From positions 124,001 to 188,000 of IMG/VR virus record IMGVR_UViG_3300043418_000072: a DNA stretch of 64,000 bases. One strand, given 5' to 3'. The notes under the pieces are model-generated. The model was not told where the DNA came from. It saw only the letters and a program-made list of their open reading frames with translations, and did not search any database. Position 1 is the stretch's first letter. Every line of letters starts with the position of its first letter. A program made the translations under genes and the position numbers. Shown here piece after piece: positions 26,500 to 55,605 of the stretch.

Positions 26500-26773
26500 G
26501 TTGTTTACTCAGTATATCAAAAAGTGTGCCAATTTTAAAAACTGCTATATTGTCGGCAGGCTCCTCTACATCGAGTGCAGAGTGGAATTCTATTAGTGTG
26601 CGCATTGCAATCTGCCCAAATGAAATGCCAAACAGTTCAACCCATCTAGTTTTCATTAAGGACTTTGTTCCGTCAAATGTTGCATAGTAGCAATCATCAA
26701 TGATGTCGATACTAACTTTAACCCCGAGAGGTTTTAGTTTAGCTTTGCATTTATCAACAAATTCAAAATCCAT
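26483..26773 (-). CDS. Hypothetical protein
   Basis: TAATG-coupled; ends in TAG. Confidence 0.65.
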   Translation of the reverse strand: MDFEFVDKCKAKLKPLGVKVSIDIIDDCYYATFDGTKSLMKTRWVELFGISFGQIAMRTLIEFHSALDVEEPADNIAVFKIGTLFDILSKQHEQTL

Positions 26774-27039
26774 TAGGACCACTTTAGTGTAAACATCATT
26801 GCATCTTGCTCTCGCTTGAATGCAAAGTAACTGCCGACATTACGCCACTCGCTACTTTTGAGATTCTCGTAGCACCAGCGCTCTTGTTTATCTGTGGTCT
26901 CGGCTTTGACGTGGTACGGCCAATACTTCTTGTTTAGTACTCTCATGCGATGTTCCTCATCAATTTGGGCCCAAAATGCTCTGCTTCGTGGGCCTTCAAA
27001 ACAGCTTGGGTACATGCTGCTGATATCATTATCGATCAC
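26773..27039 (-). CDS. W-cassette; N-terminal PolB motif A-like peptide
   Basis: Ends FKREQDAMMFTLKWS; GTGA-coupled. Confidence 0.8.
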   Translation of the reverse strand: MIDNDISSMYPSCFEGPRSRAFWAQIDEEHRMRVLNKKYWPYHVKAETTDKQERWCYENLKSSEWRNVGSYFAFKREQDAMMFTLKWS

Positions 27040-27251
27040 GCCCATTTTAGTAGAAATGCAGTTATCTCTGCCCGTGTTTTAAACTTAAACGTGTCAAAGC
27101 TCGTGCGGCGCCCGTAGCCAACCTGATCACACCATTTTTGAACGGGATCCATGTCCTCTTCACGCAGGAAAGATTCGTAGCCCCGCGGAGCAACGGGCAT
27201 CGTTGCACGAAGCTGCTTACCCTCGCGTAGCCATTTGATCTTCTTTTCCAT
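27036..27251 (-). CDS. W-cassette
   Basis: Ends AFLLKWA. Confidence 0.8.
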   Translation of the reverse strand: MEKKIKWLREGKQLRATMPVAPRGYESFLREEDMDPVQKWCDQVGYGRRTSFDTFKFKTRAEITAFLLKWA

Positions 27252-27256
27252 GCTGT

Positions 27257-27285
27257 ATTATAGCATAACACCCAATTTAGGTCAA
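27257..27285 (-). promoter_or_regulatory. sigma70-type promoter inside array
   Basis: TTGACC-17-TATAAT; -35 overlaps a TGA stop. Confidence 0.8.
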
Positions 27286-27494
27286 CTCCAACGTAAGCAG
27301 AATAAAGTTAATACTTTTTCATTGGGTACTACCACTGTCATTCCTTGCACTTGGGAATCGGTTTCTTTACACCAGTCTGCCAAGTCTTGGTAGTGTGCGC
27401 TCCAGTACATAATGTCTGACAGAACAATTAGGTGGCCACCATTAAACCATGCGTCCGTTTGCTCAGACTGTGTTGGTAGTACGTAGCGTGAAAT
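27282..27494 (-). CDS. W-cassette (not in track; start uncertain)
   Basis: ...LADWCKETD...TLFCLRWS; no ATG/GTG/TTG at expected start. Confidence 0.6.
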   Translation of the reverse strand: MSRYVLPTQSEQTDAWFNGGHLIVLSDIMYWSAHYQDLADWCKETDSQVQGMTVVVPNEKVLTLFCLRWS

Positions 27495-27495
27495 A

Positions 27496-27894
27496 TTAGC
27501 CCCACTTCAGCACGAATGCTGTCCTATCTTCGGCTCGTTTAAAGCAATAACGGTAGTTAATTTTATCCCATATAAATTCAGGATGCTCGTTGGAGCAGCG
27601 TGGTCCGAATGTTTCTTCACACCATGCATCAACTTGTTCGTAATGCGCCTGGGTTCCTTTGATGTTCCAGAATGCTCCTGCAGACAGGGGCAATCGTGCC
27701 CAATACCATTCCACGATGTTGTTTTCGGTTGCATGACTAGCGGCTTCATCCACGTAAGTCTCCCCGGTTTCGAGTTCGATTCCCATATCCATATGCTGCA
27801 CACCAATGATGTCAGTTGCGATCATTGTGGGCATGACCTTACGGATCATTGGGATCAAGATTTTCATTTGATCGTTGATATTCTTATCAGTCAT
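27496..27894 (-). CDS. W-cassette; N-terminal major-capsid Gol-like peptide
   Basis: DAWCEETFGP, ends AFVLKWG. Confidence 0.8.
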   Translation of the reverse strand: MTDKNINDQMKILIPMIRKVMPTMIATDIIGVQHMDMGIELETGETYVDEAASHATENNIVEWYWARLPLSAGAFWNIKGTQAHYEQVDAWCEETFGPRCSNEHPEFIWDKINYRYCFKRAEDRTAFVLKWG

Positions 27895-28078
27895 TTTGCG
27901 TCCATTTCAATTCATACATAATGTAAACATCTTCATTCATCCAGAGATTATCCAGTCCGTAATTGTAGACTGTACCCCACCGGTCGCCTTCGGGCCCAAA
28001 GTTTTGCTCAAGCCAATGCCATATAGTGGCCTTACGTGGATGCCCCCAATGTTCAATAGCTAGGCCGTATTGCTTCAT
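27887..28078 (-). CDS. W-cassette
   Basis: WLEQNFGP, MYELKW. Confidence 0.75.
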   Translation of the reverse strand: MKQYGLAIEHWGHPRKATIWHWLEQNFGPEGDRWGTVYNYGLDNLWMNEDVYIMYELKWTQND

Positions 28079-28365
28079 AGCCATTTCAACTTGATAAACG
28101 CCAGCAGGTCTTCACGCACAATGTAGATAGCACGGTGCCTGCCGCCGTATATTCTCCAGCGTTCTTTTCCGCCGTTTTCTTCAATCCAGTCACCAAACCA
28201 ATAGCTACAGTTTAACCGACTCCACACATGGCCGTCGTCTTCTTTAAACCCGTACTCGCAGCCTGGCTCAACATAATACAGTCTATCGCCGTGTACCATA
28301 TCATGTTTTGGGTCATGCTTGGACCGAATCCACTCTTGTGAATTAGATCTAGGTCTTTCCATCAT
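28075..28365 (-). CDS. W-cassette
   Basis: Ends FIKLKWL. Confidence 0.75.
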   Translation of the reverse strand: MMERPRSNSQEWIRSKHDPKHDMVHGDRLYYVEPGCEYGFKEDDGHVWSRLNCSYWFGDWIEENGGKERWRIYGGRHRAIYIVREDLLAFIKLKWL

Positions 28366-28574
28366 GCCCACCTCAGTGCAAACATTGCAGCATCTTGTTC
28401 TCGTGCAAAGTAGTATATACGATTTTCAGGGTTAACAAAATCCACTCCGTAATAATCGTAGTCCATATTTAAAATATTGTCCAGCAACCATATACGCAGG
28501 TCTCTAAACTGTCCAGTACTGCGCCATGGTACAGTGACTCGAATTGTACACCAATATTTCTCATGCCGACTCAT
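28362..28574 (-). CDS. W-cassette
   Basis: Ends EQDAAMFALRWA. Confidence 0.8.
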   Translation of the reverse strand: MSRHEKYWCTIRVTVPWRSTGQFRDLRIWLLDNILNMDYDYYGVDFVNPENRIYYFAREQDAAMFALRWA

Positions 28575-28591
28575 GACCACCTCAGTACAAA
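28571..28591 (-). repeat. LRWS junction repeat (minus strand TT[GC/TA]..[T/C]TGAGGTGGTCATGA)
   Basis: 12-mer TCATGACCACCT exact at 28571, 28807, 29324, 44853, 45737, 45964, 46212, 46433; many near copies. Confidence 0.95.
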
Positions 28592-28810
28592 CCATTCAGC
28601 GTCTTTTTTATCACGGAAATCAAACCATTCAATATCAAATGTACCGTCAATGGTTTCACTGCCCATGAACCCTGGGTGATCCTTGCCATAAGTCCAGCGT
28701 TTAAGATTGCCATTATGTACTTCCGGTGGCCCAAAGTTCTTGGTCATCCAATACCACATTTCAGACATTTCTAAAATCGTTCGCTGAGTATTCTTAGTAT
28801 AAACTTTCAT
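28571..28810 (-). CDS. W-cassette
   Basis: WMTKNFGP, ends WFVLRWS. Confidence 0.8.
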   Translation of the reverse strand: MKVYTKNTQRTILEMSEMWYWMTKNFGPPEVHNGNLKRWTYGKDHPGFMGSETIDGTFDIEWFDFRDKKDAEWFVLRWS

Positions 28811-29052
28811 GACCACCTTAATACAAACCAAGCAAACTTCTTTTCATCAATGACATTGTACCCAACTATCTTGTTATGGTACCCTGACAACAGTATCTCT
28901 ACACCGCACACAGTTTCTAGAAAATGCAAGTAAGCATCTTCTTTGATTTGGCCAGTGACGACCTTTGCTTCTGGCGGCAATATGATAGGCTTTTTAAGAA
29001 ATTCGTTATTAGCCTGTCTGACTACAATCTTTTTTACAAGGTCTAAATCCAT
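28807..29052 (-). CDS. W-cassette
   Basis: Ends WFVLRWS. Confidence 0.8.
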   Translation of the reverse strand: MDLDLVKKIVVRQANNEFLKKPIILPPEAKVVTGQIKEDAYLHFLETVCGVEILLSGYHNKIVGYNVIDEKKFAWFVLRWS

Positions 29053-29327
29053 TAACTCCACCTTAGTACAAACAACGCATACTCTTGCTCACATAAGAAC
29101 TTGAACGTATACCTGCCAGTGTATCTCCATTGGTCACCGGCAACGAGTTCTTCTTCACGCTCGGCACTTATAAGTTTGCACCCGCGTTCTCGCAACCATC
29201 TGTATGCTTTGACATATACACTATAGCTAGGCACAGTGTGATACAACCAGTTATTACAAGATGCACCCTCGCATCTATGCTCGTGGCGACAAATATCATC
29301 CCACTCTAACTTAACGGTATCTGTCAT
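29052..29327 (-). CDS. W-cassette
   Basis: Ends LFVLRWS. Confidence 0.8.
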   Translation of the reverse strand: MTDTVKLEWDDICRHEHRCEGASCNNWLYHTVPSYSVYVKAYRWLRERGCKLISAEREEELVAGDQWRYTGRYTFKFLCEQEYALFVLRWS

Positions 29328-29662
29328 GACCACCTCAACACAAACAGAGTTAAGTCTTCCTTACTTGTAAACCAGAACTCGCGTCCAAATATTTGATATT
29401 GCGCTGTAGTGTTCAGGTGTATCCATTTCACAACCTCTGCTATTTGGTGGTTGCCTGGTGTAGCAAACTTGTCGCTAGTAAACGGTGCCTTGACCCATCC
29501 TTCTAACATAAGTCTTTGCCTTTTGATAGTGTTGACAATTTCGTCATCGATCTCTTTTTGCAATGCTGCTCCAACCTCTTGCCATACTTCGTCGTCCTCT
29601 GGCTTCTCAATGGTCCATTTGACTTTGATGGCACGAGTCTTTGCTGCAATAGTTTGTTTCAT
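29324..29662 (-). CDS. W-cassette; N-terminal major-capsid-like segment
   Basis: IAAKTRAIKVKWTIE; ends LFVLRWS. Confidence 0.8.
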   Translation of the reverse strand: MKQTIAAKTRAIKVKWTIEKPEDDEVWQEVGAALQKEIDDEIVNTIKRQRLMLEGWVKAPFTSDKFATPGNHQIAEVVKWIHLNTTAQYQIFGREFWFTSKEDLTLFVLRWS

Positions 29663-30078
29663 GACCATTTTAGTAACAGCATTGAATACAGTTCTTCGTG
29701 TATATTGTAGTTGTTGAACGTGGGGTGACCAAATCGCAGTGCGCCTGTGTTGTAGTGACGGCACCACATATCGGGGTCTTGCTCTTGCACCCACCCGCTA
29801 ATAGTTGAAGGACGACAATGCACAGTGTACCATGTAGCACCAGCTAGAGCAAACGTATCTAACTTCTGGATTTGCTCCTTAATACCCATCTCGTAGTATC
29901 TGCTCTTTAGCATTTGGTAAGTCATTGTGGACTTGCCAGTTTGTCTACCTCCGGCAAAAATCATCATTTCATCAGGATGTATTCCACCTGAGATGTTTTG
30001 AAAAACAGATGAAGACCCGCGCGGCATTACTGCTTCCATTGTTTCAATATCCAGTACTACGGTGTTGCGTTTTGTCAT
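29659..30078 (-). CDS. W-cassette; N-terminal helicase Walker A-like segment
   Basis: IFAGGRQTGKST; ends MLLLKWS. Confidence 0.8.
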   Translation of the reverse strand: MTKRNTVVLDIETMEAVMPRGSSSVFQNISGGIHPDEMMIFAGGRQTGKSTMTYQMLKSRYYEMGIKEQIQKLDTFALAGATWYTVHCRPSTISGWVQEQDPDMWCRHYNTGALRFGHPTFNNYNIHEELYSMLLLKWS

Positions 30079-30278
30079 AGCCATCTCATTATAAAAAGCA
30101 TCTTATGTTCTTCCTTAGAGAACATAAACATACTGTCAAGATATTCCCAATTCTGCCCGTAGTGCTCACGTAGCCAGTTACTAATTTGATACCAAGTACC
30201 GCCGGGAGTATACCAATCTCCTGTACGCTTAAAGCGCACATGGTACGGATATAGTTCTCTTGTAGTTTTGGTTCTCAT
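30075..30278 (-). CDS. W-cassette
   Basis: WLREHYG, ends LFIMRWL. Confidence 0.8.
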   Translation of the reverse strand: MRTKTTRELYPYHVRFKRTGDWYTPGGTWYQISNWLREHYGQNWEYLDSMFMFSKEEHKMLFIMRWL

Positions 30279-30637
30279 TGGGCCCACATCAATGCTGCTA
30301 TTGTAGCATACTTTGTCTTTCCTACCCGAAACTTAATATCCAGAGTATCTATTTCATCTGTCCAAAATCCAAAAGTTCCCATTCTCCATTCCCAATCAAT
30401 GCCCTGACGCCCAACATGCTCTTCTAACCATGGGCGATAGTGATCGTTTGGATCAGCGGAGTCGACGATTACCTCTTCGCCATCAGGATCACAACCCAGA
30501 GAAATTGGGCCATTGGGCCAAATGACCCCAATGCTAGTGCCAGGCACAATGGTCCAGTAAAACCATTCTTTCCATTCTATAAACTTACCAAATTTTACCC
30601 AATCGCATAGCCTGTTCCAGAGATTCCGATCATCCAT
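30275..30637 (-). CDS. W-cassette with N-terminal extension
   Basis: WLEEHVG, ends AALMWAQ. Confidence 0.7.
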   Translation of the reverse strand: MDDRNLWNRLCDWVKFGKFIEWKEWFYWTIVPGTSIGVIWPNGPISLGCDPDGEEVIVDSADPNDHYRPWLEEHVGRQGIDWEWRMGTFGFWTDEIDTLDIKFRVGKTKYATIAALMWAQ

Positions 30638-30638
30638 A

Positions 30639-30869
30639 TTATTTCCATTTCAATGCAAAGAAGGTTGCATCTTTGCGATGTTTAAAGTAGAAAAATGTTG
30701 TGCCAAACGCACTAGCCATGCACCATGTGCCTAACCCTTCCCACTCAACTGGCTTGGACCAAACGTGGTTGCTATAACGAGGATTAGACCCAATATTGTG
30801 CTCGCACCATTCTTCCATTTCACCCTGTAAGTGATAACGATCTTTACCAAATTCAACAGTAGTTGTCAT
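30639..30869 (-). CDS. W-cassette
   Basis: WCEHNIG, ends FFALKWK. Confidence 0.8.
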   Translation of the reverse strand: MTTTVEFGKDRYHLQGEMEEWCEHNIGSNPRYSNHVWSKPVEWEGLGTWCMASAFGTTFFYFKHRKDATFFALKWK

Positions 30870-31099
30870 GACCATCTCAACATAAAAATTGTTCTATCCG
30901 ATTCATTAATAAAGCCCCAATGCTGTTCAGCCCTGTCGCTCCAGCTACCCTGTTTGTTTAACAGCACGGTGCGATATTCCTGTATCATCCAAAGGTAATA
31001 AGGAGTTTCGTAATGATTTACGTTCATCATGTAGTACTCACGTGATTTAGCGTAGTAGGGATCTCGTTCGCAGTAAAATTGGACTAGGTCTGTTTTCAT
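30866..31099 (-). CDS. W-cassette
   Basis: Ends IFMLRWS. Confidence 0.8.
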   Translation of the reverse strand: MKTDLVQFYCERDPYYAKSREYYMMNVNHYETPYYLWMIQEYRTVLLNKQGSWSDRAEQHWGFINESDRTIFMLRWS

Positions 31100-31356
31100 G
31101 ACCATCTCAGCAAAAACGCTACCCTATCTTCATCATTACGAAACCAAAACTTTGCATTGTTAGCATACCAACGAGCACCGGGTTCCCATACACCCATTTC
31201 TGCACTGGCACCAAAGGTTTCTACACACCATGCTAACATATTGCGCCAATTGGTATTTGTGTCATTTAAGCTACTAGGAATCCACCAATCAAAGTCTGGT
31301 CTAACCGTGTAGTAGCGAGCTCCGTGTATGCGCCCTTCTAACAATTCAAACTTCAT
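31096..31356 (-). CDS. W-cassette
   Basis: WCVETFG, ends AFLLRWS. Confidence 0.8.
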   Translation of the reverse strand: MKFELLEGRIHGARYYTVRPDFDWWIPSSLNDTNTNWRNMLAWCVETFGASAEMGVWEPGARWYANNAKFWFRNDEDRVAFLLRWS

Positions 31357-31576
31357 TGCTTGCTTTCAGTGCAAACCAAGTTATGATTTCGTTATTCAGG
31401 CAATCGTGTCGAATCCATACACCATCGGGCGCACTAAACCATTCGCGGTCCACAAGCGGCATCGTGATACGGTTGTCACTAATGTGCAGGCGGCACAGGT
31501 CAATTTCCTCACTGCCCCATATAAAGTCCTTGGGAACGTGTTTGAATTTAAAAAATCGGTGAGTCTCGCTATACAT
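31346..31576 (-). CDS. W-cassette, variant tail
   Basis: WFALKA. Confidence 0.7.
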   Translation of the reverse strand: MYSETHRFFKFKHVPKDFIWGSEEIDLCRLHISDNRITMPLVDREWFSAPDGVWIRHDCLNNEIITWFALKASNEV

Positions 31577-31833
31577 TACTTTGCCCACTTTAGTGCGAAT
31601 AGCACTGCTTCTTCATCACATTCAAACTCAATGAACTTTTCACGAAGATACCCGGGACTGTGGTAGTAAGGATGGCGTGTGTTTGCTTTAAGCCATTCAT
31701 TGACTATATAATCCTTGTAGCTGATTTGCCATTGTGCTGGGACACCATCAATGGTGTGTGCATAGACAACACGGTGCAACACGGGAAAATTAACACCTGG
31801 GAATAACGGATTAGTTTTATAAGTTACTGCCAT
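31576..31833 (-). CDS. W-cassette
   Basis: Ends IEFECDEEAVLFALKWAK. Confidence 0.8.
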   Translation of the reverse strand: MAVTYKTNPLFPGVNFPVLHRVVYAHTIDGVPAQWQISYKDYIVNEWLKANTRHPYYHSPGYLREKFIEFECDEEAVLFALKWAK

Positions 31834-32051
31834 AACAATCCAAACAGTGTTGCATCTTCATCCCGATAAAAACGAATCGCCCATCGTTCGTCGCCATATC
31901 TGCCGGGCCCTTTGTTAACAATAGCAACACGGACGATGCAGGAACGTTCTTGAGGAAAGTGTGCGTCAAGCCACTTTTGTAGAGTTTCCATAGAGAACGT
32001 GCGACTGCCATTCATTAAGGTTGGGTATGGAATTTCAAGCAACTGCTGCAC
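31824..32051 (-). CDS. W-cassette
   Basis: Ends DEDATLFGLLWQ. Confidence 0.8.
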   Translation of the reverse strand: MQQLLEIPYPTLMNGSRTFSMETLQKWLDAHFPQERSCIVRVAIVNKGPGRYGDERWAIRFYRDEDATLFGLLWQ

Positions 32052-32391
32052 CTTGCCTTAAATAGTACCAAGCCAAGCGACTTTCTAATAAGTCATAAAA
32101 TGCTCTAGCTTCGTGTTTGTGAAAAAACACAACTCCCCCAACCACATACATGTCTTCCCATCCGTATGTCATATCAGACCGTTGAAAATAATTTTTTTCG
32201 CTAATCCACAGTGTTTCTAGTTCGCCATTGTTTAGCGTAATGCCCAGGCCAACTTCACGGCATCCAATGTCTCGGAACAGAAGATCAACTAACTTGTCTC
32301 GCTGTCTAGCATTATGTGCAAAGTTATTCTCAGCCCATGTCACTAACCAAGTGTTGTTAGGAAGATCTGTGAGTTTAAAAGGATTAGACAT
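32035..32391 (-). CDS. Hypothetical protein within array
   Basis: No clear W tail. Confidence 0.7.
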   Translation of the reverse strand: MSNPFKLTDLPNNTWLVTWAENNFAHNARQRDKLVDLLFRDIGCREVGLGITLNNGELETLWISEKNYFQRSDMTYGWEDMYVVGGVVFFHKHEARAFYDLLESRLAWYYLRQGAAVA

Positions 32392-32392
32392 G

Positions 32393-32674
32393 CTATGCCC
32401 ATTTCAAACTAAACATTAACAGATCGCTTTCGCGGCGGAATACAAAGATCAAATCTGAGATATCTTCAAGATTGTCATCGTTGTCGTAGTACTCTTCTTC
32501 CTCTTCGTCGCTGCCTGGAACTAGTACTTCTTCATAGCAGTACCAATCTTCGGCGCCCAGCCATGTATTGTTTGCATGTCGCTTGCTACCAGGGCCAACG
32601 TTAGCGTTGAGCCATGCTTCGATTTGATCTAATTGATCGTGATGCTTGTGTGCTAGTTTAAGTTTATAACTCAT
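32393..32674 (-). CDS. W-cassette with acidic insert
   Basis: WLNANVGP, ends MFSLKWA-TAG. Confidence 0.8.
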   Translation of the reverse strand: MSYKLKLAHKHHDQLDQIEAWLNANVGPGSKRHANNTWLGAEDWYCYEEVLVPGSDEEEEEYYDNDDNLEDISDLIFVFRRESDLLMFSLKWA

Positions 32675-32940
32675 GTGAATTTCATTACTAAAAATGTATA
32701 GGCTTTTGTAGCTTCTTCTAAGTTACGGTATTTCCAGTGTGTGCCAGCTTGCCCGCTGCGGCAGCGAGTTGGGTCAATCACATCGCGAACTTGCTCGGGG
32801 AAACTTTTCTCCCCTGCAGGTCGTTCTCGGTCCATCCAGTAATCATATGTCATCTCGACACGATAATGCACCTTGTCGCTTTTGCGATGGCGCCATTTGA
32901 TTAATCGGAAATTCTCGCCGCGGTGGATAATATTGTCCAT
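32671..32940 (-). CDS. W-cassette, variant tail
   Basis: EEATKAYTFLVMKF. Confidence 0.6.
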   Translation of the reverse strand: MDNIIHRGENFRLIKWRHRKSDKVHYRVEMTYDYWMDRERPAGEKSFPEQVRDVIDPTRCRSGQAGTHWKYRNLEEATKAYTFLVMKFT

Positions 32941-32941
32941 A

Positions 32942-33418
32942 TCATTCAGTTCCCAAAATATTCCACATACCCAATTGCTCTTTGAGATGTCTATTCTCTG
33001 CTTGTACCTTGTCAATTACTTCGTGAGCTTTTTCAGCTTCTCTAACTGCGTAAAGGTGATTGGATTTTGCAGAGTCAATTGCCCGCTGCGCATCTACTAG
33101 AAGTTCTGTAACGGTGCGTCGACTTAACTTATCAAGTTCTTCACGAGCATCCGCTAAATCCATTTCGGCTACCGCACGGTCATCTTCTGCGTAGGCAACC
33201 ATCTTTTGCAAGTGGGTGATGTAATCTCCGGGGTAGTAGTCTTGGTGATCGTCTGTAAAGACCCATGTGTTAGGATCCATGCCTGCTTCGACTAAATCAC
33301 CAACAAGCCCACCGTTAGGTGCAGACAGCATGTTGATTAATCGTTTGACCAATGGATCAGTGCTAGTCAAATCCAAGTAGCGTAGCAGCTCTACGTCAGA
33401 TAGATGATTTAGATTCAT
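32942..33418 (-). CDS. Coiled-coil hypothetical protein
   Basis: Heptad-like C-terminal half. Confidence 0.7.
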   Translation of the reverse strand: MNLNHLSDVELLRYLDLTSTDPLVKRLINMLSAPNGGLVGDLVEAGMDPNTWVFTDDHQDYYPGDYITHLQKMVAYAEDDRAVAEMDLADAREELDKLSRRTVTELLVDAQRAIDSAKSNHLYAVREAEKAHEVIDKVQAENRHLKEQLGMWNILGTE

Positions 33419-33725
33419 GTTTTAAAATCTCGAATAGTGTTGCATATTCAACCCAGGGTTCCATGTGAAAGCCTTTGCCCCACACTGCCCAGAATCGTTG
33501 TTTGTAAACAGTGCGTAACCAAATGCGATTACCACCTATTGTTTTAACTGGCCAAAGTGCAAACGTCTTGCGCCATGGGTAGCAGTCAGGCCCGTTGTAA
33601 ATTCGTTCAGTTATGTCCAACTCCACAGTCTCCGATCCTATTAGCAATGGCGCAATGCCTGTTGGGTTCTTGTCCCACTTAAGGCGATGTTCTCCGATTC
33701 GGCCATTTTTAAGACGAACTTTCAT
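33396..33725 (-). CDS. Hypothetical protein
   Basis: WRKTFALWPVKT. Confidence 0.65.
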   Translation of the reverse strand: MKVRLKNGRIGEHRLKWDKNPTGIAPLLIGSETVELDITERIYNGPDCYPWRKTFALWPVKTIGGNRIWLRTVYKQRFWAVWGKGFHMEPWVEYATLFEILKHESKSSI

Positions 33726-34006
33726 TAATACGAATGTGTTACCGACTCAGTATAGATTTGTTGTAGTAGATGGATTCTACCTGCGTACCGTAATTGTAAC
33801 ATACATTCACCTTTATCGTCAAATGTGGTTAGTTTTATAACCCCGGGCGAGCTGCGGTAGTGATAGACCTGCCCGCTGGTTTCAATACGCTGATGCTCAC
33901 CTTGCTGGGCGTCTAGTTGTATGCCATTGTTTTTGCAGTAGTCTACATCAGACTGGTCGGGGATAACATTGTGATCCAACACCCAAATTCTTACTATAGT
34001 TAACAT
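33725..34006 (-). CDS. W-cassette-like variant
   Basis: MLQLRY; similar to 48754..49047. Confidence 0.6.
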   Translation of the reverse strand: MLTIVRIWVLDHNVIPDQSDVDYCKNNGIQLDAQQGEHQRIETSGQVYHYRSSPGVIKLTTFDDKGECMLQLRYAGRIHLLQQIYTESVTHSY

Positions 34007-34263
34007 ACACTATCCGCAAAACTCAGAGCAAACATAATAGCAGCTTGTTCCCATTCAAATTGAAATGTAGTGTATTCACTATCCCAAGTTTTTGTGCCTC
34101 CACGCCAATCAATGTAGTAGCGTTTGAAATAGCCCTTATCGCCTGTTGGATAGTCGTCGCACCACTTCATCATAGCATTGACTTCAGGCGAGTTCTTTTT
34201 AATACGCACCTTATATCTAAAGTCGGGGTACTGATTCCCGCCACCGCCGTAAAATAATTCCAT
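34000..34263 (-). CDS. W-cassette
   Basis: KWCDDY, FEWEQAAIMFALSF. Confidence 0.75.
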   Translation of the reverse strand: MELFYGGGGNQYPDFRYKVRIKKNSPEVNAMMKWCDDYPTGDKGYFKRYYIDWRGGTKTWDSEYTTFQFEWEQAAIMFALSFADSVC

Positions 34264-34481
34264 TAGCTCCACCTCAACACAAACATTGTAGCATCTTCTT
34301 CCCTGCGAAATTTAATCCATCCACCATGGCTATCCCAAGTGCCATTACCTAATGCTAGTCCCGGGTGACCGAATGTGGTCCAGCACCATCCGTATATTTC
34401 GCTCATCTCTGGACCTTGTGGACTGTAGTACATTTCCCACTCGTAGTATCGGTCCGGGCGATGTTTGAATTTAATATTCAT
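34263..34481 (-). CDS. W-cassette
   Basis: WCWTTFG, ends EEDATMFVLRWS. Confidence 0.8.
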   Translation of the reverse strand: MNIKFKHRPDRYYEWEMYYSPQGPEMSEIYGWCWTTFGHPGLALGNGTWDSHGGWIKFRREEDATMFVLRWS

Positions 34482-34897
34482 TACACACTCCAGTATAGAC
34501 TAAACATTACAGCATCTTGCTCATTGTTAAATGCAAAAAATAGAATGTTGTGGCTTAGACCCATGCACCCTTGCGTCCATTCGCCATCCCAACTCTTGTC
34601 AACTGGGAGGATATCTTCTCTCCATTTACCGGTGGCATTTGCTGCGCACCACGTGGTCATGTTATCAACTACGGTGATCCATCCTTGGCCATGCCGCCGT
34701 TCCAGTGGCACTGTGTCGTCAAACGGGACGAGGTAAGGGTAGCCACGATACACGTCCTTACGAATACTACCACCACGTGCGCAAAAATCAGGATCATTTA
34801 TGAGATCAAACTGGCGCTGAGTCCATCCCTTCTTCTTAAGGTAACGGGCATGTCGCCATGCTTGAAACCTACCTACCGTAGCGTGTAGTAACTTCAT
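34481..34897 (-). CDS. W-cassette with N-terminal extension
   Basis: Ends EQDAVMFSLYWSV. Confidence 0.75.
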   Translation of the reverse strand: MKLLHATVGRFQAWRHARYLKKKGWTQRQFDLINDPDFCARGGSIRKDVYRGYPYLVPFDDTVPLERRHGQGWITVVDNMTTWCAANATGKWREDILPVDKSWDGEWTQGCMGLSHNILFFAFNNEQDAVMFSLYWSV

Positions 34898-35084
34898 CTA
34901 GTGTTTTCTTTGCTATTTTTCCTGACGGATGATCTGGGTGCATACGTGCGATATCATCTAGTGCAGTCCACATCAACTCGTGTTCGTGTTGTTGCTGGTA
35001 TACCTTATCCCGCAAGCGACTGGCATCCATAATGCTTAGGACACCAGCAATTAACTTGGGAAGGATACGAGCAAGGAATTCCAA
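34869..35084 (-). CDS. Hypothetical protein
   Basis: Start uncertain; ends in TAG. Confidence 0.55.
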   Translation of the reverse strand: MEFLARILPKLIAGVLSIMDASRLRDKVYQQQHEHELMWTALDDIARMHPDHPSGKIAKKTLDEVTTRYGR

Positions 35085-35312
35085 TTATAAGTACTTCAAT
35101 CTAAACATTGTTTCTGCTGCGTCATTGAAGAAGTCTAAGTAGACAGTAGTGATGTAACCTGTTTGTTCTCGGTAAACCTGATGATGGCGGTCGGTGAATC
35201 CTAACTCACGCTTCATTACAGATCGCAAGAGCCAAACACTAGGCTTGTCTGCGTACTCAATTTTAATCTGAGCTCGGATCTTGCGCCACTCAGTATCGGT
35301 TAGTGTGATCAT
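35085..35312 (-). CDS. W-cassette
   Basis: Ends TMFRLKYL. Confidence 0.75.
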   Translation of the reverse strand: MITLTDTEWRKIRAQIKIEYADKPSVWLLRSVMKRELGFTDRHHQVYREQTGYITTVYLDFFNDAAETMFRLKYL

Positions 35313-35541
35313 ACTTTAACTTGAAAAAGGTTGCATCCTCATCTTTAAGTTTAGCAGTTACTCTGTAACGAAGAGAGTATGAGTGGTAATCGTTGCACTT
35401 GCTCCATTGCGGGGTTTCAATTGCATTAGCCATAACCCATTTCCCTGCATCACTTTGCTGCCATTCCCATAGAGGCCATGCGGCATAAAGGTCCGGGTCA
35501 TCAACATCCCCCACTGAAAATTCATGAACAGCTAGAGTCAC
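35290..35541 (-). CDS. W-cassette
   Basis: DEDATFFKLKY. Confidence 0.75.
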   Translation of the reverse strand: MTLAVHEFSVGDVDDPDLYAAWPLWEWQQSDAGKWVMANAIETPQWSKCNDYHSYSLRYRVTAKLKDEDATFFKLKYDHTNRY

Positions 35542-35720
35542 CGCCATTTTAATGCAAATAGTGTAGCATCAGAGGGACTAGAGAAATCAAACCTATACGT
35601 GGGATTGTTACCCAGCATACTGTTTAAGTCTATTGTCCATCCCTTAATACCAAATTGTTGTCTGCACCAGCCGCCCGCCTCAAGCGCCTTATCGGCACCA
35701 TTAATTGTGATAGAGTTCAT
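35538..35720 (-). CDS. W-cassette (first of array 1)
   Basis: WCRQQFG, ends LFALKWR. Confidence 0.8.
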   Translation of the reverse strand: MNSITINGADKALEAGGWCRQQFGIKGWTIDLNSMLGNNPTYRFDFSSPSDATLFALKWR

Positions 35721-35726
35721 AGTACT

Positions 35727-35755
35727 ATTATACACTAAATGCCTTTATGCGTCAA
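35727..35755 (-). promoter_or_regulatory. sigma70-type promoter heading W-array 1
   Basis: TTGACG-17-TATAAT. Confidence 0.8.
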
Positions 35756-43990: not shown

Positions 43991-44170
43991 CTAACTCCAT
44001 TTTAAAACAAACATCATTTCATCCTCGGGCGTGTCAAACTCAACCATAAAGTACAAGTAATCGTCTTTACGGTAGCTGTCATGAAAATGCCCATTGGGAA
44101 TATCACTGAGCCCGCTTTCAATCATGCGTTGCTGAATGTTGACCCAGTCAATCATACGGTACGTTAACAT
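43991..44170 (-). CDS. W-cassette (59 aa, not in track)
   Basis: ...VEFDTPEDEMMFVLKWS-TAG. Confidence 0.75.
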   Translation of the reverse strand: MLTYRMIDWVNIQQRMIESGLSDIPNGHFHDSYRKDDYLYFMVEFDTPEDEMMFVLKWS

Positions 44171-44171
44171 G

Positions 44172-44462
44172 TCATGCCCACTTTAGTAAGAACCAAGCAT
44201 ACTTTTGCTCGTCGAGCACTGTGGTGATAACCCTCTGTCCACTATTGTGATAGCGATACTCAAACCCATGCACATGTTTACACCATTCCCCAAAACCAAA
44301 GTCTGTGACTGTATCTTTAATCTCAGGCCACTGGCTCCATGCGTTTTGAATTGCAGTTAGTGCTTGATCCTTTGGTGCCATTATTTCCTTACAGAGGTTT
44401 GTGCCGTAGACGCTGTTTAGTTGCATCTTGCGATGCAATTTTGCCCATTCTTCTTTAGTCAT
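44172..44462 (-). CDS. W-cassette; N-terminal PolB motif B-like peptide
   Basis: RKMQLNSVYG; ends WFLLKWA. Confidence 0.8.
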   Translation of the reverse strand: MTKEEWAKLHRKMQLNSVYGTNLCKEIMAPKDQALTAIQNAWSQWPEIKDTVTDFGFGEWCKHVHGFEYRYHNSGQRVITTVLDEQKYAWFLLKWA

Positions 44463-44665
44463 GCAAACCTCAATGCAAACATGGTAGCATATTTTTCATC
44501 AGAAAAATACCAGTCAGACCATTCACCTTCACCGGTTTCCCACACATAAAACCACTCACCTCCATACTCGCCAATATTTTTTTCGCACCACTTAACTCTA
44601 GCCTCAGTGCGTTCATGGTGCCATCCATAGAGTCTGACTTCGGTCATTGGTTCACTTAATGTCAT
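44459..44665 (-). CDS. W-cassette
   Basis: WCEKNIG, ends MFALRFA. Confidence 0.8.
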   Translation of the reverse strand: MTLSEPMTEVRLYGWHHERTEARVKWCEKNIGEYGGEWFYVWETGEGEWSDWYFSDEKYATMFALRFA

Positions 44666-44856
44666 AGCCACCTCAATGCAAACAGTGTAGCATCTTCTTC
44701 TTTATGAAACCAAAATGTTCGGATAGTGTCCCATGCCCGACGCTTGCCATTAGGTTCCGGTGGTCCAAAGTTATCCAAGCACCACTTCCACGCGACCTGT
44801 GTACCACTTTCCCCGTATACATCACGAAGTTTCTTGCTGATTTTAATTTCAATCAT
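44662..44856 (-). CDS. W-cassette
   Basis: WCLDNFGP, ends LFALRWL. Confidence 0.8.
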   Translation of the reverse strand: MIEIKISKKLRDVYGESGTQVAWKWCLDNFGPPEPNGKRRAWDTIRTFWFHKEEDATLFALRWL

Positions 44857-45101
44857 GACCACCTCAACATAAACCAAGAGTACAATTCTTCGTCTTCAAA
44901 CTCGATCCAGTGCAGAACACTACTTTCAAATAAGTTGCCCACCTCTTCCATGTAGTACACTGCACGGTACTCAACCAGTGCTGCATTAACATAAGCGTCG
45001 GTTACTGCCTGTGGTCCCACTTGTTCTTGCAGGTGTGCAACAAATTTGTTCCACACAGGGATAGGTGCATAGTCTTTAACAAGATCCAATCGTATCATCA
45101 A
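44853..45101 (-). CDS. W-cassette
   Basis: Ends WFMLRWS. Confidence 0.8.
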   Translation of the reverse strand: MMIRLDLVKDYAPIPVWNKFVAHLQEQVGPQAVTDAYVNAALVEYRAVYYMEEVGNLFESSVLHWIEFEDEELYSWFMLRWS

Positions 45102-45265
45102 AACCTCAGCGCAAACTCTGTGGCTTTTAACGGGTCACGAAAACGAAAGTCCCAGCCACAGCCATCAGAACTGCACACCCAATCATTATAGTCGAGATTG
45201 GCATGGCACCATTCTGCCCCGCTGGTGTAATCATCAATTGTTACTATTGCCCATTTCGCCATCAT
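45098..45265 (-). CDS. W-cassette
   Basis: Ends EFALRF. Confidence 0.75.
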   Translation of the reverse strand: MMAKWAIVTIDDYTSGAEWCHANLDYNDWVCSSDGCGWDFRFRDPLKATEFALRF

Positions 45266-45543
45266 AAGTGCCTTAATGTAAACATAATTAGATTTTCTTC
45301 TTCGAAGAAGTCTGCATAACGCTTGCTGTATTCTGTATAAATGCGGCCACCACATGACCAAACATAATGATCAAACGCTTGACCAGCACCATAACGTAAG
45401 TTAAGTCGATCAAAGTGGTCAATCCAATGTCCCGAGGTCTTATACCCATTGTTTGCAGCCCACTTCTGGAAGATAGTGTTTAGCTGGTCGGATTCAATAC
45501 GTGCCTTTTTCATAAGGGAGTCTCTTGTATATTGCTTTTTCAT
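45262..45543 (-). CDS. W-cassette
   Basis: Ends MFTLRHL. Confidence 0.75.
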   Translation of the reverse strand: MKKQYTRDSLMKKARIESDQLNTIFQKWAANNGYKTSGHWIDHFDRLNLRYGAGQAFDHYVWSCGGRIYTEYSKRYADFFEEENLIMFTLRHL

Positions 45544-45740
45544 TTATGGATCAATGCAAACATTATAGCATCTTTTTCATTTTCGAAGTAAACGCCATGT
45601 CCTCCCATGCTAAAATGTCCGATTCCATCAAACTCTTCGCACCAAAGCAATGCCTCTATCCAACCAATGGTTTTTTGGTTTTCAGATAATGGAATGTATG
45701 TGTAGTCGCAATCCATTAGCATAGTTAGCTCTTGCTTCAT
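45540..45740 (-). CDS. W-cassette
   Basis: FENEKDAIMFAL. Confidence 0.75.
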   Translation of the reverse strand: MKQELTMLMDCDYTYIPLSENQKTIGWIEALLWCEEFDGIGHFSMGGHGVYFENEKDAIMFALIHK

Positions 45741-45967
45741 GACCACCTCAACATAAACATTGTCATGTGTTGTTCGTCAGGAAACGATACCCACAACTCG
45801 GGTTTGCGACCAACTGGTCCAACCTTAACAACATTGTAGTCTTGCTTGAGCCAATCCCAAATAGTTATGTGATGCCCGTCGTTGTTGTGTATGTCACGAC
45901 CAATGTTGTCCCAGTAGTAATTGGCAATCTTCTGAAAGTATGGGCGAATGTCTTTGCGTAGTTTCAT
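45737..45967 (-). CDS. W-cassette
   Basis: Ends MFMLRWS; close to 46433. Confidence 0.8.
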   Translation of the reverse strand: MKLRKDIRPYFQKIANYYWDNIGRDIHNNDGHHITIWDWLKQDYNVVKVGPVGRKPELWVSFPDEQHMTMFMLRWS

Positions 45968-46215
45968 GACCACCTCAACACAAACATGGTATAGTCGTGC
46001 TCGTCTTTGAAGGTCACTACAAATCTATACCCACTGTCTTTACCTTCAATACAAGCACCGACTTGAGCAATTTCTTCTTCAAGGATATGGTCCACCAATG
46101 CCGGAGGTGCGGACTTTTTAGTAATACGGCGTGCCCATACATCTGCATACCAACGCTCGAAGTAATTCCTGGGTTGTTTACAGTTGATGTTTTGGTAATA
46201 CTCTTTTACAATCAT
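45964..46215 (-). CDS. W-cassette
   Basis: Ends MFVLRWS. Confidence 0.8.
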   Translation of the reverse strand: MIVKEYYQNINCKQPRNYFERWYADVWARRITKKSAPPALVDHILEEEIAQVGACIEGKDSGYRFVVTFKDEHDYTMFVLRWS

Positions 46216-46436
46216 GACCACCTCAACACAAAGTAAGTTAAATCTTGTTCAGTGCTAAACACAATGCACTTGGTTTCGTTATTCCAGTGTGCATTGTAGT
46301 CTCTGAGAAACTCTTCTCCCGAGAGGGGAGCACGGCGGGTCTTCATCATCTCAGGTTCTATCACTGCTCTATAGAAGTTTTTGTATGCCATTGGGCTTTG
46401 GTCGTAATCGTCGGATATGTAAAGAGTTGTACTCAT
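46212..46436 (-). CDS. W-cassette
   Basis: Ends YFVLRWS. Confidence 0.8.
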   Translation of the reverse strand: MSTTLYISDDYDQSPMAYKNFYRAVIEPEMMKTRRAPLSGEEFLRDYNAHWNNETKCIVFSTEQDLTYFVLRWS

Positions 46437-46645
46437 GACCACCTCAGTATAAACCAATTGAGTGTTTTCTCATCGGGAAATGACACCACTATCTGCTGGC
46501 TGGCTGCACTGCCAAAAGTGTGGCTAATACCGTACTCACGGCCAAGCCAATCCCAGACACTAATATTAGACTTGTATAGATCATCCCAATAGTGGTTAGC
46601 AACCTTCTTGAAGTAGGGATAGATGTCTGCATAGATTTTAGTCAT
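46433..46645 (-). CDS. W-cassette
   Basis: Ends WFILRWS. Confidence 0.8.
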   Translation of the reverse strand: MTKIYADIYPYFKKVANHYWDDLYKSNISVWDWLGREYGISHTFGSAASQQIVVSFPDEKTLNWFILRWS

Positions 46646-46926
46646 GCCCACCTCAACAAGAATACTGCACGATCACGCTCGTACTTGAAGAAGATTGTTT
46701 CAAATCTCCAGATCCAGTCACGCCCAAAATGTTCTTCACACCACAGCATAACTTCTTCAAACGGTGCGGCACCATTAAACTGCCAGCAGGAGAAACAGTG
46801 ACACACAATATTAACGGCATCTGCGTCATTGGTGTACAGGCAAGGAGTCTCTGCAACAAACTCACGCAGGCGCAGGCGAAGAGTGCCGTAGATTGAATCA
46901 ATTTGCAGTGTGTCTTTTACTATCAT
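46642..46926 (-). CDS. W-cassette
   Basis: WCEEHFG, ends VFLLRWA. Confidence 0.8.
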   Translation of the reverse strand: MIVKDTLQIDSIYGTLRLRLREFVAETPCLYTNDADAVNIVCHCFSCWQFNGAAPFEEVMLWCEEHFGRDWIWRFETIFFKYERDRAVFLLRWA

Positions 46927-55587: not shown

Positions 55588-55605
55588 AGAATAGAGTGTG
55601 TAATT

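What the first reader, a model, noticed from the sequence alone, without database searches (positions are those of the whole stretch)
26773..35720. W-array 1: about 29 tandem, translationally coupled paralogues of one unknown small domain
Seen: 60-140 aa ORFs sharing a mid W-[CL]-x-E-x-[FI]-G helix in many members and a C-terminal [FY]-x-F-x-x-E-x-D-A-x-x-F-x-L-[RK]-W, otherwise hugely divergent, head to tail over 9 kb behind a sigma70 promoter. With array 2 and outliers there are about 45-48 copies, roughly a fifth of the window. Inferred: the pattern looks like beta-alpha-beta-beta-alpha, and the F.F.DE.DA segment recalls the beta3-alpha2 of RRM/ferredoxin-like folds. A conserved scaffold with variable aromatic surfaces suggests a diversified binder library, for example anti-defence or host-takeover factors.
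Basis: partly seen in the sequence, partly recalled or inferred. Interest (0 to 1): 0.9.

Follow-up and report, generated by a model that had tools for sequence, protein, structure and literature searches.

The report
Tandem small-protein family in huge phage
A 354-kb uncultured phage carries two early-gene operons holding more than 30 very divergent copies of one small, previously undescribed protein domain. A few copies are fused to short conserved pieces of the phage capsid protein, which suggests a battery of host-interaction or counter-defence factors, but nothing about function has been tested.

Summary
On the minus strand, 26773-35735 (array 1) and 43991-47371 (array 2) hold head-to-tail small genes sharing a ~55-residue C-terminal domain. 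I count 20-21 robust members in array 1 plus about 8 degenerate ones, and 12-13 in array 2. The similarity is not only the RBS-imposed tail: 19 ORFs still match after the last 7 residues are removed. The two arrays are homologous by hhalign (98%, E 1e-13). AlphaFold gives one beta-beta-alpha-beta-beta-alpha fold (pLDDT 83) with no significant PDB match and no Pfam match, so an RRM-like fold is not supported. The family is large: 4,325 cluster representatives, nearly all short proteins that end with the domain, from uncultured phages. Related huge-phage contigs carry syntenic arrays. Orthologues are under purifying selection (omega 0.15). Near-consensus sigma-70 promoters head both arrays, and most stop and start codons overlap (ATGA or TAATG). 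Unexpectedly, some members carry N-terminal fragments of the gp23-type major capsid protein, including the T4 Gol-region motif, and these fusions recur in distant relatives. Best reading: an old lineage-specific expansion of early accessory binder proteins, function untested.

The parts
26773..35735 (-). Array 1: 33 head-to-tail small genes. 21 are robust members of the W-domain family, about 7-8 are degenerate members and 5 are unrelated small genes.
35727..35755 (-). Sigma-70-like promoter TTGACG-17-TATAAT (11/12) at the head of array 1. The first gene probably starts at the ATG at 35720, not the GTG at 35735.
   Evidence: sequence
35538..35735 (-). member (65 aa as listed)
   Evidence: HMM E 2.5e-12, 2.3e-10
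34481..34897 (-). member with a 69-aa N-terminal extension of unknown origin
   Evidence: E 3e-14; no PHROG or Pfam hit
34263..34481 (-). Member, 72 aa, the best-scoring copy. This is the protein modelled by AlphaFold.
   Evidence: E 5.6e-21; model
34000..34272 (-). member
   Evidence: E 3.6e-13
32393..32674 (-). member with an acidic insert (net charge -16)
   Evidence: E 8.2e-18
31824..32051 (-). member
   Evidence: E 3.3e-12
31576..31833 (-). member
   Evidence: E 1.3e-12
31096..31356 (-). member
   Evidence: E 2.8e-16, 7.3e-20
30866..31105 (-). member
   Evidence: E 1e-14
30639..30875 (-). member
   Evidence: E 1.6e-14
30075..30287 (-). member
   Evidence: E 4.8e-14
29659..30084 (-). Degenerate member (tail LLLKWS). 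Its N-terminal part carries a P-loop (GGRQTGKS) and may derive from the Walker-A region of the large terminase.
   Evidence: Window residues 7-64 match P0114 (E 1e-8). P0114 residues 16-50 match T4 gp17 residues 142-176 (E 6e-5). The PHROG terminase hit for P0114 has E 0.026. hhalign of the subfamily against gp17 gives the same register but E 0.041 only. Inconclusive.
29324..29794 (-). Member fused to major-capsid-protein segment 2. The likely true start is the ATG overlapping the stop at 29659.
   Evidence: E 3.1e-13. Residues 44-86 match GAP32 MCP residues 152-200, E 6e-6. Pfam Gp23 positions 124-194, E 7e-4. The same architecture in L016:13892-14224 matches phrog_138 at E 9e-9.
29052..29333 (-). 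member
   Evidence: E 4.3e-15
28807..29061 (-). member (tail half only)
   Evidence: E 3.9e-5 with the window HMM only
28571..28831 (-). member
   Evidence: E 3.8e-17
28362..28595 (-). Member. The three genes 28362-29061 are absent from the 320-kb relative.
   Evidence: E 2.3e-13
27887..28084 (-). member
   Evidence: E 2.9e-11
27496..27894 (-). Member fused to major-capsid-protein segment 1, the Gol-region motif
   Evidence: E 1e-16. Pfam Gp23 positions 5-32, E 2.6e-6, 27.6 bits against a cutoff of 24.4. 58% identity to GAP32 MCP residues 54-84. Aligns to T4 gp23 residues 98-117.
27282..27410 (-). truncated member (42 aa)
   Evidence: E 7.7e-11
27257..27285 (-). sigma-70-like promoter TTGACC-17-TATAAT (11/12) inside the array
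27036..27251 (-). member
   Evidence: E 2.5e-10
26773..27045 (-). last member of array 1
   Evidence: E 1.2e-16
28075..28371 (-). degenerate member
   Evidence: E 0.013; tail
30275..30637 (-). possible degenerate member
   Evidence: tail only; E 4.1
35085..35547 (-). two possible degenerate members (35085-35312 and 35290-35547)
   Evidence: tails; E 1.2 and 3.0
32942..34006 (-). three embedded genes that are not members (158, 109 and 93 aa)
   Evidence: no HMM hit; no family hit
43991..47371 (-). Array 2, 13 robust members: 43991-44170, 44172-44462, 44459-44671, 44662-44877, 44853-45101, 45540-45746, 45737-45973, 45964-46221, 46212-46457, 46433-46651, 46642-46926, 46923-47144, 47141-47371. Marginal copies are 45098-45361, 45262-45543 and 47368-47577.
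   Evidence: E 1.7e-8 to 8.3e-17; 12 found with the foreign HMM; 13 of 15 junctions are ATGA; homologous to array 1 by hhalign
47959..47987 (-). sigma-70-like promoter TTGACC-17-TATAAT (11/12) upstream of array 2

Best explanation
The arrays are an old lineage-specific expansion of one uncharacterised small phage protein domain. The domain has about 55-65 residues, a predicted beta-beta-alpha-beta-beta-alpha fold and an aromatic core, and it always sits at the C-terminus.

The genome is a ~354-kb uncultured phage with a gp23-type capsid (IMG/VR UViG_3300043418_000072). Its host is probably a betaproteobacterium.

Shown:
- The copies are homologous over the whole domain.
- The family is widespread in uncultured phages.
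- Each copy is kept by purifying selection.
- The genes sit in a region dense with near-consensus sigma-70 promoters, and most stop and start codons overlap.

Inferred:
- The genes are transcribed early by host RNA polymerase as long polycistronic messages and translated by coupling, giving a battery of 30 or more small proteins at the start of infection.
- The conserved residues build the fold. The variable surfaces and N-terminal extensions give each copy its own partner, so the set acts as protein binders for host takeover or counter-defence.
- The members that carry conserved pieces of the major capsid protein (and possibly of the large terminase) present those peptides to whatever normally recognises them. 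Candidates are EF-Tu, chaperonin or capsid-sensing immune receptors. A decoy or blocker role is the most attractive reading, but it is unproven.
For: Homology and specificity:
- 34 hits with the window HMM and 32 with the foreign HMM, all in the arrays on the coding strand.
- 0 hits in 5,295 control ORFs.
- Hits persist without the tail.
- hhalign of array 1 against array 2: 98.1%, E 1.3e-13.

Fold:
- AlphaFold pLDDT 83.3.
- Independent BFVD models of uncultured-phage relatives match with TM 0.66-0.81, E<1e-3.
- The capsid-fusion member shows the same domain topology.

Spread:
- 4,325 representatives at E<=1e-3 among 1.84 billion proteins.
- Median length 78 aa. The domain ends within 3 residues of the C-terminus in 133 of 149.
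- Related contigs hold 7-26 copies per locus of 2-20 kb. Synteny is the same: ligase, WYL_2, Metallophos, then the array.

Selection:
- 30 orthologue pairs against the 320-kb relative give dS 0.33, dN 0.049, omega 0.15.
- Presence/absence differences and reshuffled order appear in more distant relatives.

Early expression:
- 20 of 21 near-consensus sigma-70 sites are on the coding strand, against 1.95 expected.
- There is no T4-type late promoter in the arrays.

Coupling.

Varied surfaces: pI 4.1-9.8.

Context:
- A NAMPT plus NMNAT/Nudix pair of the NARP2 type lies 3 kb from array 2 (10.1101/2024.02.11.579819).
- A Gad2-family gene lies next to the array in L004.

Capsid fragments:
-.
- They recur in 5 of 149 foreign members and in L004, L011, L013 and L016.
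- The motif residues P, A, I, Q and M are invariant among fusions that are only 26-35% identical.
- Major capsid proteins are common triggers of bacterial immunity (PMC9712102, PMC13581612). [quoted passage not shown]
Against: - No function has been tested, and no partner is known.
- There is no structural or sequence link to any characterised anti-defence or takeover protein.
- Orthologues show no sign of diversifying selection, and the copies are ancient. There is no trace of a current arms race at the timescale sampled.
- Promoter and coupling evidence are consensus matches only.
- A peptide that triggers a sensor would be expected to activate it rather than block it, unless the fused domain prevents activation.
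- Capsid-fragment fusions are a small minority, about 3-6% of members.
- The terminase-fragment link is not significant for the window's own copy.
Confidence: 0.45

Rival explanations
1. Capsid or assembly-associated proteins. The domain docks onto virion or morphogenesis proteins, as internal or decoration proteins, assembly regulators or chaperone adaptors. The fused capsid, terminase and tail-fibre pieces would reflect that link. A variant of this reading is that they act as dominant-negative fragments that poison assembly of competing phages.
For: The only recognisable fused fragments come from late virion or packaging proteins:
- two capsid segments;
- a terminase-like segment;
- a motif shared with PHROG families that are mostly of unknown function (best E 2e-7), four of them annotated as virion structural or tail-fibre protein, in P0089.

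A Cpn10 co-chaperonin gene lies nearby, by synteny.
Against: - The arrays sit behind sigma-70-type early promoters, with no late promoter motif.
- Most members have no extension at all.
- The set of copies is not conserved between relatives. A fixed structural role would predict a conserved set.
Confidence: 0.15
2. Nucleic-acid-binding regulators: a family of small transcription or translation factors expanded in one phage lineage, like the roughly 35-copy zinc-ribbon expansion of Bacillus phage G.
For: - The best (non-significant) PDB neighbours are eIF1/SUI1-type chains and RNA-polymerase subunits.
- There is precedent for such an expansion in a jumbo phage (PMC7824862).
Against: - The fold matches are at noise level (E>=1, TM<=0.46).
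- pI is spread from 4.1 to 9.8, and about half of the copies are acidic.
- The conserved positions are core aromatics, not basic surface residues.
Confidence: 0.1
3. Selfish or near-neutral duplicates: cassettes that spread by unequal recombination at the conserved tail and junction and capture pieces of other genes, without any function of their own.
For: - A conserved junction (tail codons, SD and ATGA) is inherited with each copy.
- Copy number varies between relatives.
- Chimeric N-termini and two-domain fusions exist.
Against: - Purifying selection acts on nearly every copy, omega 0.15.
- There are no recent duplicates and no DNA-level repeats.
- Capsid-motif residues stay invariant across distant fusions.
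Confidence: 0.08
4. Not a domain: the likeness is only the tail imposed by the ribosome-binding site and the overlapping start of the next gene.
For: The L-R-W codons (TTG AGG TGG) contain the GAGG that serves the next ATG.
Against: - 19 ORFs still match after the last 7 residues are removed, and 14 after 13 are removed.
- Lysine variants (AAA TGG) carry no SD yet keep the tryptophan.
- Synonymous codon variation occurs at the conserved F and L positions.
- The helix-1 motif is conserved 40 residues upstream.
Confidence: 0.01

Closest known systems
Lineage-specific expansions of one small domain in jumbo phages (for example the roughly 35-copy zinc ribbon of Bacillus phage G, PMC7824862)
   Same: Dozens of paralogues of one very small domain in a single large phage genome, with function unknown.
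   Different: The fold is different and has no metal ligands. Here the copies form tightly coupled tandem operons behind early promoters. The family is found only in uncultured phages.
T4 gp23 Gol region (activates Lit, binds EF-Tu) and capsid-sensing immunity (CapRel, Avs7)
   Same: Member 27496-27894 and its relatives carry the same conserved capsid segment, aligned to T4 gp23 residues 98-117. The review calls this the most conserved part of gp23 (PMC3014915).
   Different: Here the segment is detached from the capsid protein, placed at the N-terminus of a small early protein and joined to an unrelated domain. No interaction has been tested. That the Gol peptide spans about residues 93-122 is from my memory, not from a tool.
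Hyperplastic early and accessory regions of T4-like phages, and phage counter-defence islands (NARP2, Gad2)
   Same: Small early genes of unknown function behind sigma-70-type promoters, variable between relatives, and adjacent to known counter-defence genes.
   Different: Those regions hold unrelated genes. Here a single domain is repeated more than 30 times.
Tandem arrays of diversified immunity proteins in bacterial polymorphic-toxin loci, and multigene families of large eukaryotic viruses
   Same: Arrays of divergent paralogues thought to neutralise many different partners.
   Different: No sequence or fold relation was found. The comparison is by analogy and from general knowledge only.
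eIF1/SUI1-like alpha/beta fold
   Same: Similar order of two hairpins and two helices. These are the top PDB neighbours.
   Different: E>=1 and TM 0.42-0.46, with no sequence similarity. This is not evidence of relationship.

Membership tests
Any Pfam-A family | Score at or above the family's gathering threshold over the domain | tested here: not met
   10 window members gave no hit to the domain at E<=0.1. Among 149 foreign members the only recurrent family is Gp23, and it hits the N-terminal extensions. Precomputed Pfam is '-' for all 62 relatives.
Any PHROG family | Profile match over the domain | tested here: not met
   hits fall on the N-terminal extensions only
RRM / ferredoxin-like fold | beta-alpha-beta-beta-alpha-beta topology, with structural neighbours of that class | tested here: not met
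   The model topology is beta-beta-alpha-beta-beta-alpha. There is no RRM or ferredoxin-like chain among the PDB matches, and nothing below E 1.
eIF1/SUI1 fold | Significant structural superposition (TM > 0.5, low E) | tested here: not met
   TM 0.42-0.46, E>=1.1
Solved structures by sequence | Profile match to any PDB chain | tested here: not met
   best E 0.12
Gp23-type major capsid protein (PF07068), for 27496-27894 and 29324-29794 | Match across the HK97-type fold (376 profile positions) | tested here: not met
   Only positions 5-32 (27.6 bits) and 124-194 (19.5 bits) match. These are fragments, not capsid proteins.
Translationally coupled operon | Same strand; stop and start overlapping or within a few nt; SD inside the upstream gene | tested here: met
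   Coupling itself is not testable with these tools.
Early (host sigma-70) transcription unit | Near-consensus -35/-10 elements on the coding strand, enriched over chance, with no late promoter | tested here: met
   Timing of expression is not testable here.
Anti-defence protein | Demonstrated inhibition of a defence system, or homology to a protein with such activity | not testable with these tools
   No homology to known families. Only context is available.
Large terminase fragment (for 29659-30084) | Significant alignment to the TerL Walker-A region | tested here: inconclusive
   The relative P0114 against T4 gp17 residues 142-176 gives E 6e-5 pairwise, and the PHROG terminase hit has E 0.026. 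The window subfamily profile against gp17 gives the same register with E 0.041 and probability 1.3%. There are competing weak P-loop and RNR hits.

The most novel reading that the evidence does not exclude
The domain is a display scaffold. The phage makes, at the very start of infection, small proteins that present the most conserved peptides of its own late proteins: two capsid segments, possibly the terminase Walker-A region, and in other phages a motif seen in virion-structural and tail-fibre proteins. These would occupy or blunt host pattern-recognition receptors and EF-Tu-dependent sensors (Lit-, CapRel- and Avs-type) before the real capsid and terminase appear. The extension-less copies would bind other immune or host proteins. 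This would be a phage-encoded decoy library against sensing of the core phage proteome.
Probability: 0.12. Interest if true: 0.9.

Novelty: new variant of a known kind. Interest (0 to 1): 0.68.

Why it matters
- This is a protein family with thousands of sequence clusters. It takes up a fifth of a 64-kb stretch of a huge phage genome and is kept by selection, yet it has no entry in Pfam, PHROGs or the PDB and was not found in cultured phage genomes.
- It is small, about 60 residues, and predicted with good confidence, so structure and binding studies are easy.
- The recurrent fusion of its members to the most conserved capsid segment, the region that in T4 binds EF-Tu and triggers Lit, gives a concrete and testable entry point. 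The open question is how phages cope with immune receptors that sense conserved structural proteins.
- Even if that idea fails, the arrays are a clean example of how huge phages fill their genomes with stable, ancient paralogue sets rather than recent amplifications.

Tried and rejected
- **Cultured phages.** Megablast of the array against 50,697 phage records found no match. tblastn of three members found none, apart from one E 0.7 hit. tblastn is weak for ~25% identical 60-residue domains, so absence from cultured phages is provisional.
- The same tool with a 37-aa query failed as too short.
- **The phage's own capsid gene.** The attempt returned only the 80 closest GAP32-like loci, none from this contig. 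Those loci served as a negative control instead.
- **Word-based searches** for more capsid-fragment or P-loop-fragment fusions found only close relatives.
- **N-terminus of 29659-30084.** Ribonucleotide reductase, UvsX and DnaB readings all rest on weak hits. Terminase is the best-supported reading but is not significant for the window copy.
- **Other N-terminal extensions.** Nine of ten further N-terminal extensions from related loci gave no family hit in PHROGs, and the tenth matched only unannotated families weakly (best E 0.006).
- **AlphaFold of the capsid-fragment fusion.** The fragment is modelled with pLDDT below 50, so nothing can be said about how it is presented.
- **DNA-level checks.** No tandem DNA repeats, no RNA family in the arrays, and no late promoter motif.
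- **Literature.** Searches found no description of this family.

Full report
**What is there**

The small ORFs of the finding lie on the minus strand. A regular-expression pass over all minus-strand reading frames already shows about 40 tails of the type F-x-L-[RK]-W-x-stop, clustered at 26.8-35.7 kb and 44.0-47.6 kb.

Aligning the last 70 residues of 15 copies shows more than a tail:
- an N-terminal Y/W-rich strand region;
- a helix with W-C-x-E-x-F-G;
- a W-containing strand;
- F-x-F-x-x-E-x-D-A-x-x-F-x-L-R-W-S at the end.

**How many copies, and controls**

- An HMM iterated inside the window converges on 34 ORFs at E<=1e-3, 21 in array 1 and 13 in array 2. All are on the coding strand, with none elsewhere among 592 ORFs.
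- A model built only from 149 foreign proteins recovers 32 of them.
- The window model finds nothing in 5,295 ORFs from 80 unrelated phage loci.
- About eight further array-1 genes keep a degenerate tail without reaching significance, and five embedded genes are unrelated.
The robust figure is 32-34.
- The arrays do cover 19.6% of the window.

**Is it only the ribosome-binding site?**

The junctions explain part of the tail. The codons TTG AGG TGG TCA TGA place GAGG five bases before an ATG that overlaps the stop, either as ATGA or as TAATG.
- In array 1, 16 of 32 junctions are of these two kinds and 25 of 32 starts lie within 8 nt of the stop.
- In array 2, 13 of 15 junctions are ATGA.
- The starts printed by the ORF listing (GTG inside AGGTGG) are therefore probably six bases too early.

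The domain is nevertheless real:
- With the last 7 residues removed from both the foreign model and the window ORFs, 19 ORFs still hit at E<=1e-3. With the whole last helix removed, 14 still hit.
- Lysine variants (AAA TGG) lack an SD yet keep the tryptophan.
- Profiles of array 1 and array 2 align over 45 columns, from helix 1 to the end, with 98.1% probability and E 1.3e-13.

**Fold**

- AlphaFold2 on the 34-sequence alignment gives pLDDT 83.3 and pTM 0.68. The order is strand, strand, helix (24-37), strand, strand, helix (61-71).
- Foldseek against the PDB finds nothing significant. The best matches have E about 1 and TM <=0.46 and are eIF1/SUI1-type chains.
- A profile search of PDB sequences also finds nothing.
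- Against BFVD, four models of 'uncharacterized protein, uncultured Caudovirales phage' match with E<1e-3 and TM 0.66-0.81. Independently built models of relatives therefore share the fold.
- The RRM/ferredoxin idea is not supported.
- The nearly invariant positions across 149 foreign members are W, C, W, F, D, F, L and W, mostly core-type residues.
- Members contain 5.9% W, 6.1% F and 5.8% Y, and pI ranges from 4.1 to 9.8.

**How widespread**

- The profile finds 4,325 representatives (clusters at 50% identity) at E<=1e-3 among 1.84 billion proteins.
- Of the best 149, the median length is 78 residues. In 133 the domain ends within three residues of the C-terminus. Six are two-domain fusions.
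- None of 62 relatives has a Pfam domain or a name other than 'hypothetical'. Pfam and PHROGs do not cover the domain.
- Cultured phage genomes gave no hit by megablast or tblastn.

**The genome and its relatives**

- The window is positions 124,001-188,000 of IMG/VR contig UViG_3300043418_000072, which is 354,098 bp.
- Its DNA ligase is at most 35% identical to any cultured phage protein.
- The capsid-like fragment described below is closest to the GAP32, RaK2 and CBB group of ~350-kb myoviruses.
- A Betaproteobacteria-type permuted tmRNA suggests the host group.
- Related contigs all carry arrays at the same place, downstream of the ligase, WYL_2 and Metallophos genes, with 7-26 HMM hits per locus of 2-20 kb. 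These include contigs of 320,767 and 240,493 bp, several of 30-104 kb, and NCBI and ENA metagenome scaffolds.
- Against the 320-kb relative, array 1 is collinear, but protein identity varies from 72 to 100% per gene. Three window genes (28362-29061) are missing there. In more distant relatives only some copies have recognisable orthologues, and their order differs.

**Selection and age**

- For 30 orthologue pairs, pooled dS is 0.33, dN is 0.049 and omega is 0.15. Omega is 0.20 for the N-terminal parts and 0.115 for the last 55 codons.
- Per-gene dS ranges from 0 to about 1.5, which indicates mosaic recombination.
- Paralogues share only ~20-36% protein identity and 60-75% DNA identity over the 50-nt tails. 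Tandem Repeats Finder reports nothing.
- These are old, individually maintained genes, not a recent amplification and not decaying copies.

**Expression signals**

- A TTGACG-17-TATAAT site (11/12) sits at 35755-35727, directly before the first gene. Similar sites lie at 47987 before array 2 and at 27285 inside array 1.
- Window-wide, 21 sites match at least 11 of 12 positions, 20 of them on the coding strand. Markov shuffles give a mean of 1.95 and a maximum of 6.
- The T4 late promoter motif is absent from the arrays.
- I infer early transcription by host RNA polymerase. This is a consensus argument, not a measurement.

**The unexpected part: fragments of late proteins**

*Capsid segment 1.*
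- Member 27496-27894 begins with a segment that matches Pfam Gp23 positions 5-32 (E 2.6e-6, above the gathering score).
- The segment is 58% identical to residues 54-84 of the GAP32 major head protein.
- It aligns with T4 gp23 residues 98-117.
- A review describes the Gol region, in the first quarter of gp23, as the most conserved part of the protein. It binds EF-Tu and activates the Lit protease (PMC3014915).
- That Gol spans roughly residues 93-122 is my recollection, not a tool result.

*Capsid segment 2.*
- Member 29324-29794 probably starts at the ATG overlapping the upstream stop.
- It carries a second capsid segment matching GAP32 residues 152-200 (E 6e-6) and Pfam Gp23 positions 124-194 (E 7e-4).

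*Recurrence in relatives.*
- Both architectures recur in the distant relative L016: 10676-11050 and 13892-14224. The latter matches phrog_138 at E 9e-9.
- Segment 1 also recurs in L004, L011 and L013 and in unrelated metagenome members: 5 of 149 by Pfam, and P0129 by PHROG.
- Among nine such fusions that are only 26-35% identical overall, the motif residues P, A, I, Q and M are invariant.

*Other fragments.*
- A foreign member, P0114, carries a segment that aligns with the Walker-A region of T4 terminase gp17, residues 142-176 (E 6e-5 pairwise). Its only PHROG hits are large terminase (E 0.026).
- Window gene 29659-30084 is homologous to P0114 over this part (E 1e-8). Its own link to terminase is not significant, and it has competing weak P-loop and RNR hits.
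- Another foreign member, P0089, starts with a motif shared with many PHROG families. Most are of unknown function (best E 2e-7); four are annotated as virion structural or tail-fibre protein (E 3e-4 to 0.019).
- AlphaFold models the capsid fragment with low confidence and the domain with the usual topology.
- Short conserved motifs are the easiest fragments to recognise, so there is a detection bias. Even so, the recurrence and conservation of the capsid fusions argue that they are functional.

**Interpretation**

*Shown:* this is a real, large, uncharacterised protein family. It is expanded in tandem in a clade of huge phages and maintained by purifying selection, in a promoter-rich region with overlapping genes.

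*Inferred:*
- Expression is early and polycistronic, with each copy having its own partner through variable surfaces and extensions. That would make the set a battery of binders for host takeover or counter-defence.
- The context fits. A NARP2-type NAMPT plus NMNAT/Nudix pair lies 3 kb from array 2 (10.1101/2024.02.11.579819; PMC13464706). A Gad2-family gene lies beside the array in a relative.
- Capsid proteins and other core phage proteins are frequent triggers of bacterial immunity (PMC9712102, PMC13581612), which makes a decoy or blocker role for the fragment-bearing members attractive.
- The same data also fit an assembly-related or inter-phage role.

*Against the arms-race picture:* there is no diversifying selection between orthologues, and the copies are ancient.

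**Novelty**

I found no description of the family in the held literature. Expansions of tiny domains in jumbo phages are known, for example the phage G zinc ribbon (PMC7824862). What is new here is the domain, its tightly coupled array architecture, and its fusions to capsid fragments. I rate it a new variant of a known kind, with interest 0.68.

Noticed in passing
window 27496-27894 and 29324-29794 (minus); L016:10676-11050 and 13892-14224; P0036, P0053, P0090, P0095, P0129: Small early proteins made of a conserved major-capsid-protein segment (the Gol-region motif, or a second segment further along the capsid protein) fused to the array domain. The fusions recur in distant relatives with invariant motif residues.
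   Followed up: yes
window 29659-30084 (minus); P0114: The N-terminal part carries a P-loop (GGRQTGKS). In the relative P0114 it aligns with the Walker-A region of T4 large terminase. The link is not significant for the window copy.
   Followed up: partly
window 55583-55998 (minus): Phage-encoded tmRNA of the permuted Betaproteobacteria type (RF01850, 110 bits), with tag peptide ANDSQFLMVA. This is a clue to the host group.
   Followed up: no
window 50391-50465 (minus): A tRNA with anticodon CUA (amber-suppressor type; ARAGORN labels it Pyl). TAG is used as a stop by a few array genes (stops at 34869, 32393, 26483). Possible stop-codon recoding was not examined.
   Followed up: no
window 50518-51921 and 52672-53691 (minus): NAMPT plus a bifunctional NMNAT/Nudix gene, the gene pair described as the NAD+ reconstitution pathway NARP2 that counters NAD-depleting defences.
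   Followed up: partly
whole window, minus strand: Twenty near-consensus sigma-70 promoters (at least 11 of 12 positions) lie on the coding strand, against one on the other strand and about two expected by chance. The whole 64 kb looks like an early region.
   Followed up: yes
P0001, P0002, P0006, P0029, P0070, P0101: Six of 149 foreign family members contain two copies of the domain in one polypeptide, as if neighbouring array genes had fused. Neighbouring copies might work together.
   Followed up: no
L004:3237-3830 (also L005-L007): A Gad2-family (anti-Gabija, PF26128) gene lies about 1.3-1.6 kb upstream of the array (first member 5159-5416) in a related metagenome phage.
   Followed up: no
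window 23743-24282, 38500-38802, 49981-50265, 59487-61934: Other accessory genes: an Fe/Mn superoxide dismutase, a WYL_2 domain protein, a Cpn10 co-chaperonin (by synteny with L001) and an 815-aa amidoligase-domain protein.
   Followed up: no
window 28362-29061 versus L010: Three adjacent array genes are present in the window but absent from the 320-kb relative. Neighbouring genes differ in dS from 0 to about 1.5, which is a recombination mosaic inside the array.
   Followed up: partly
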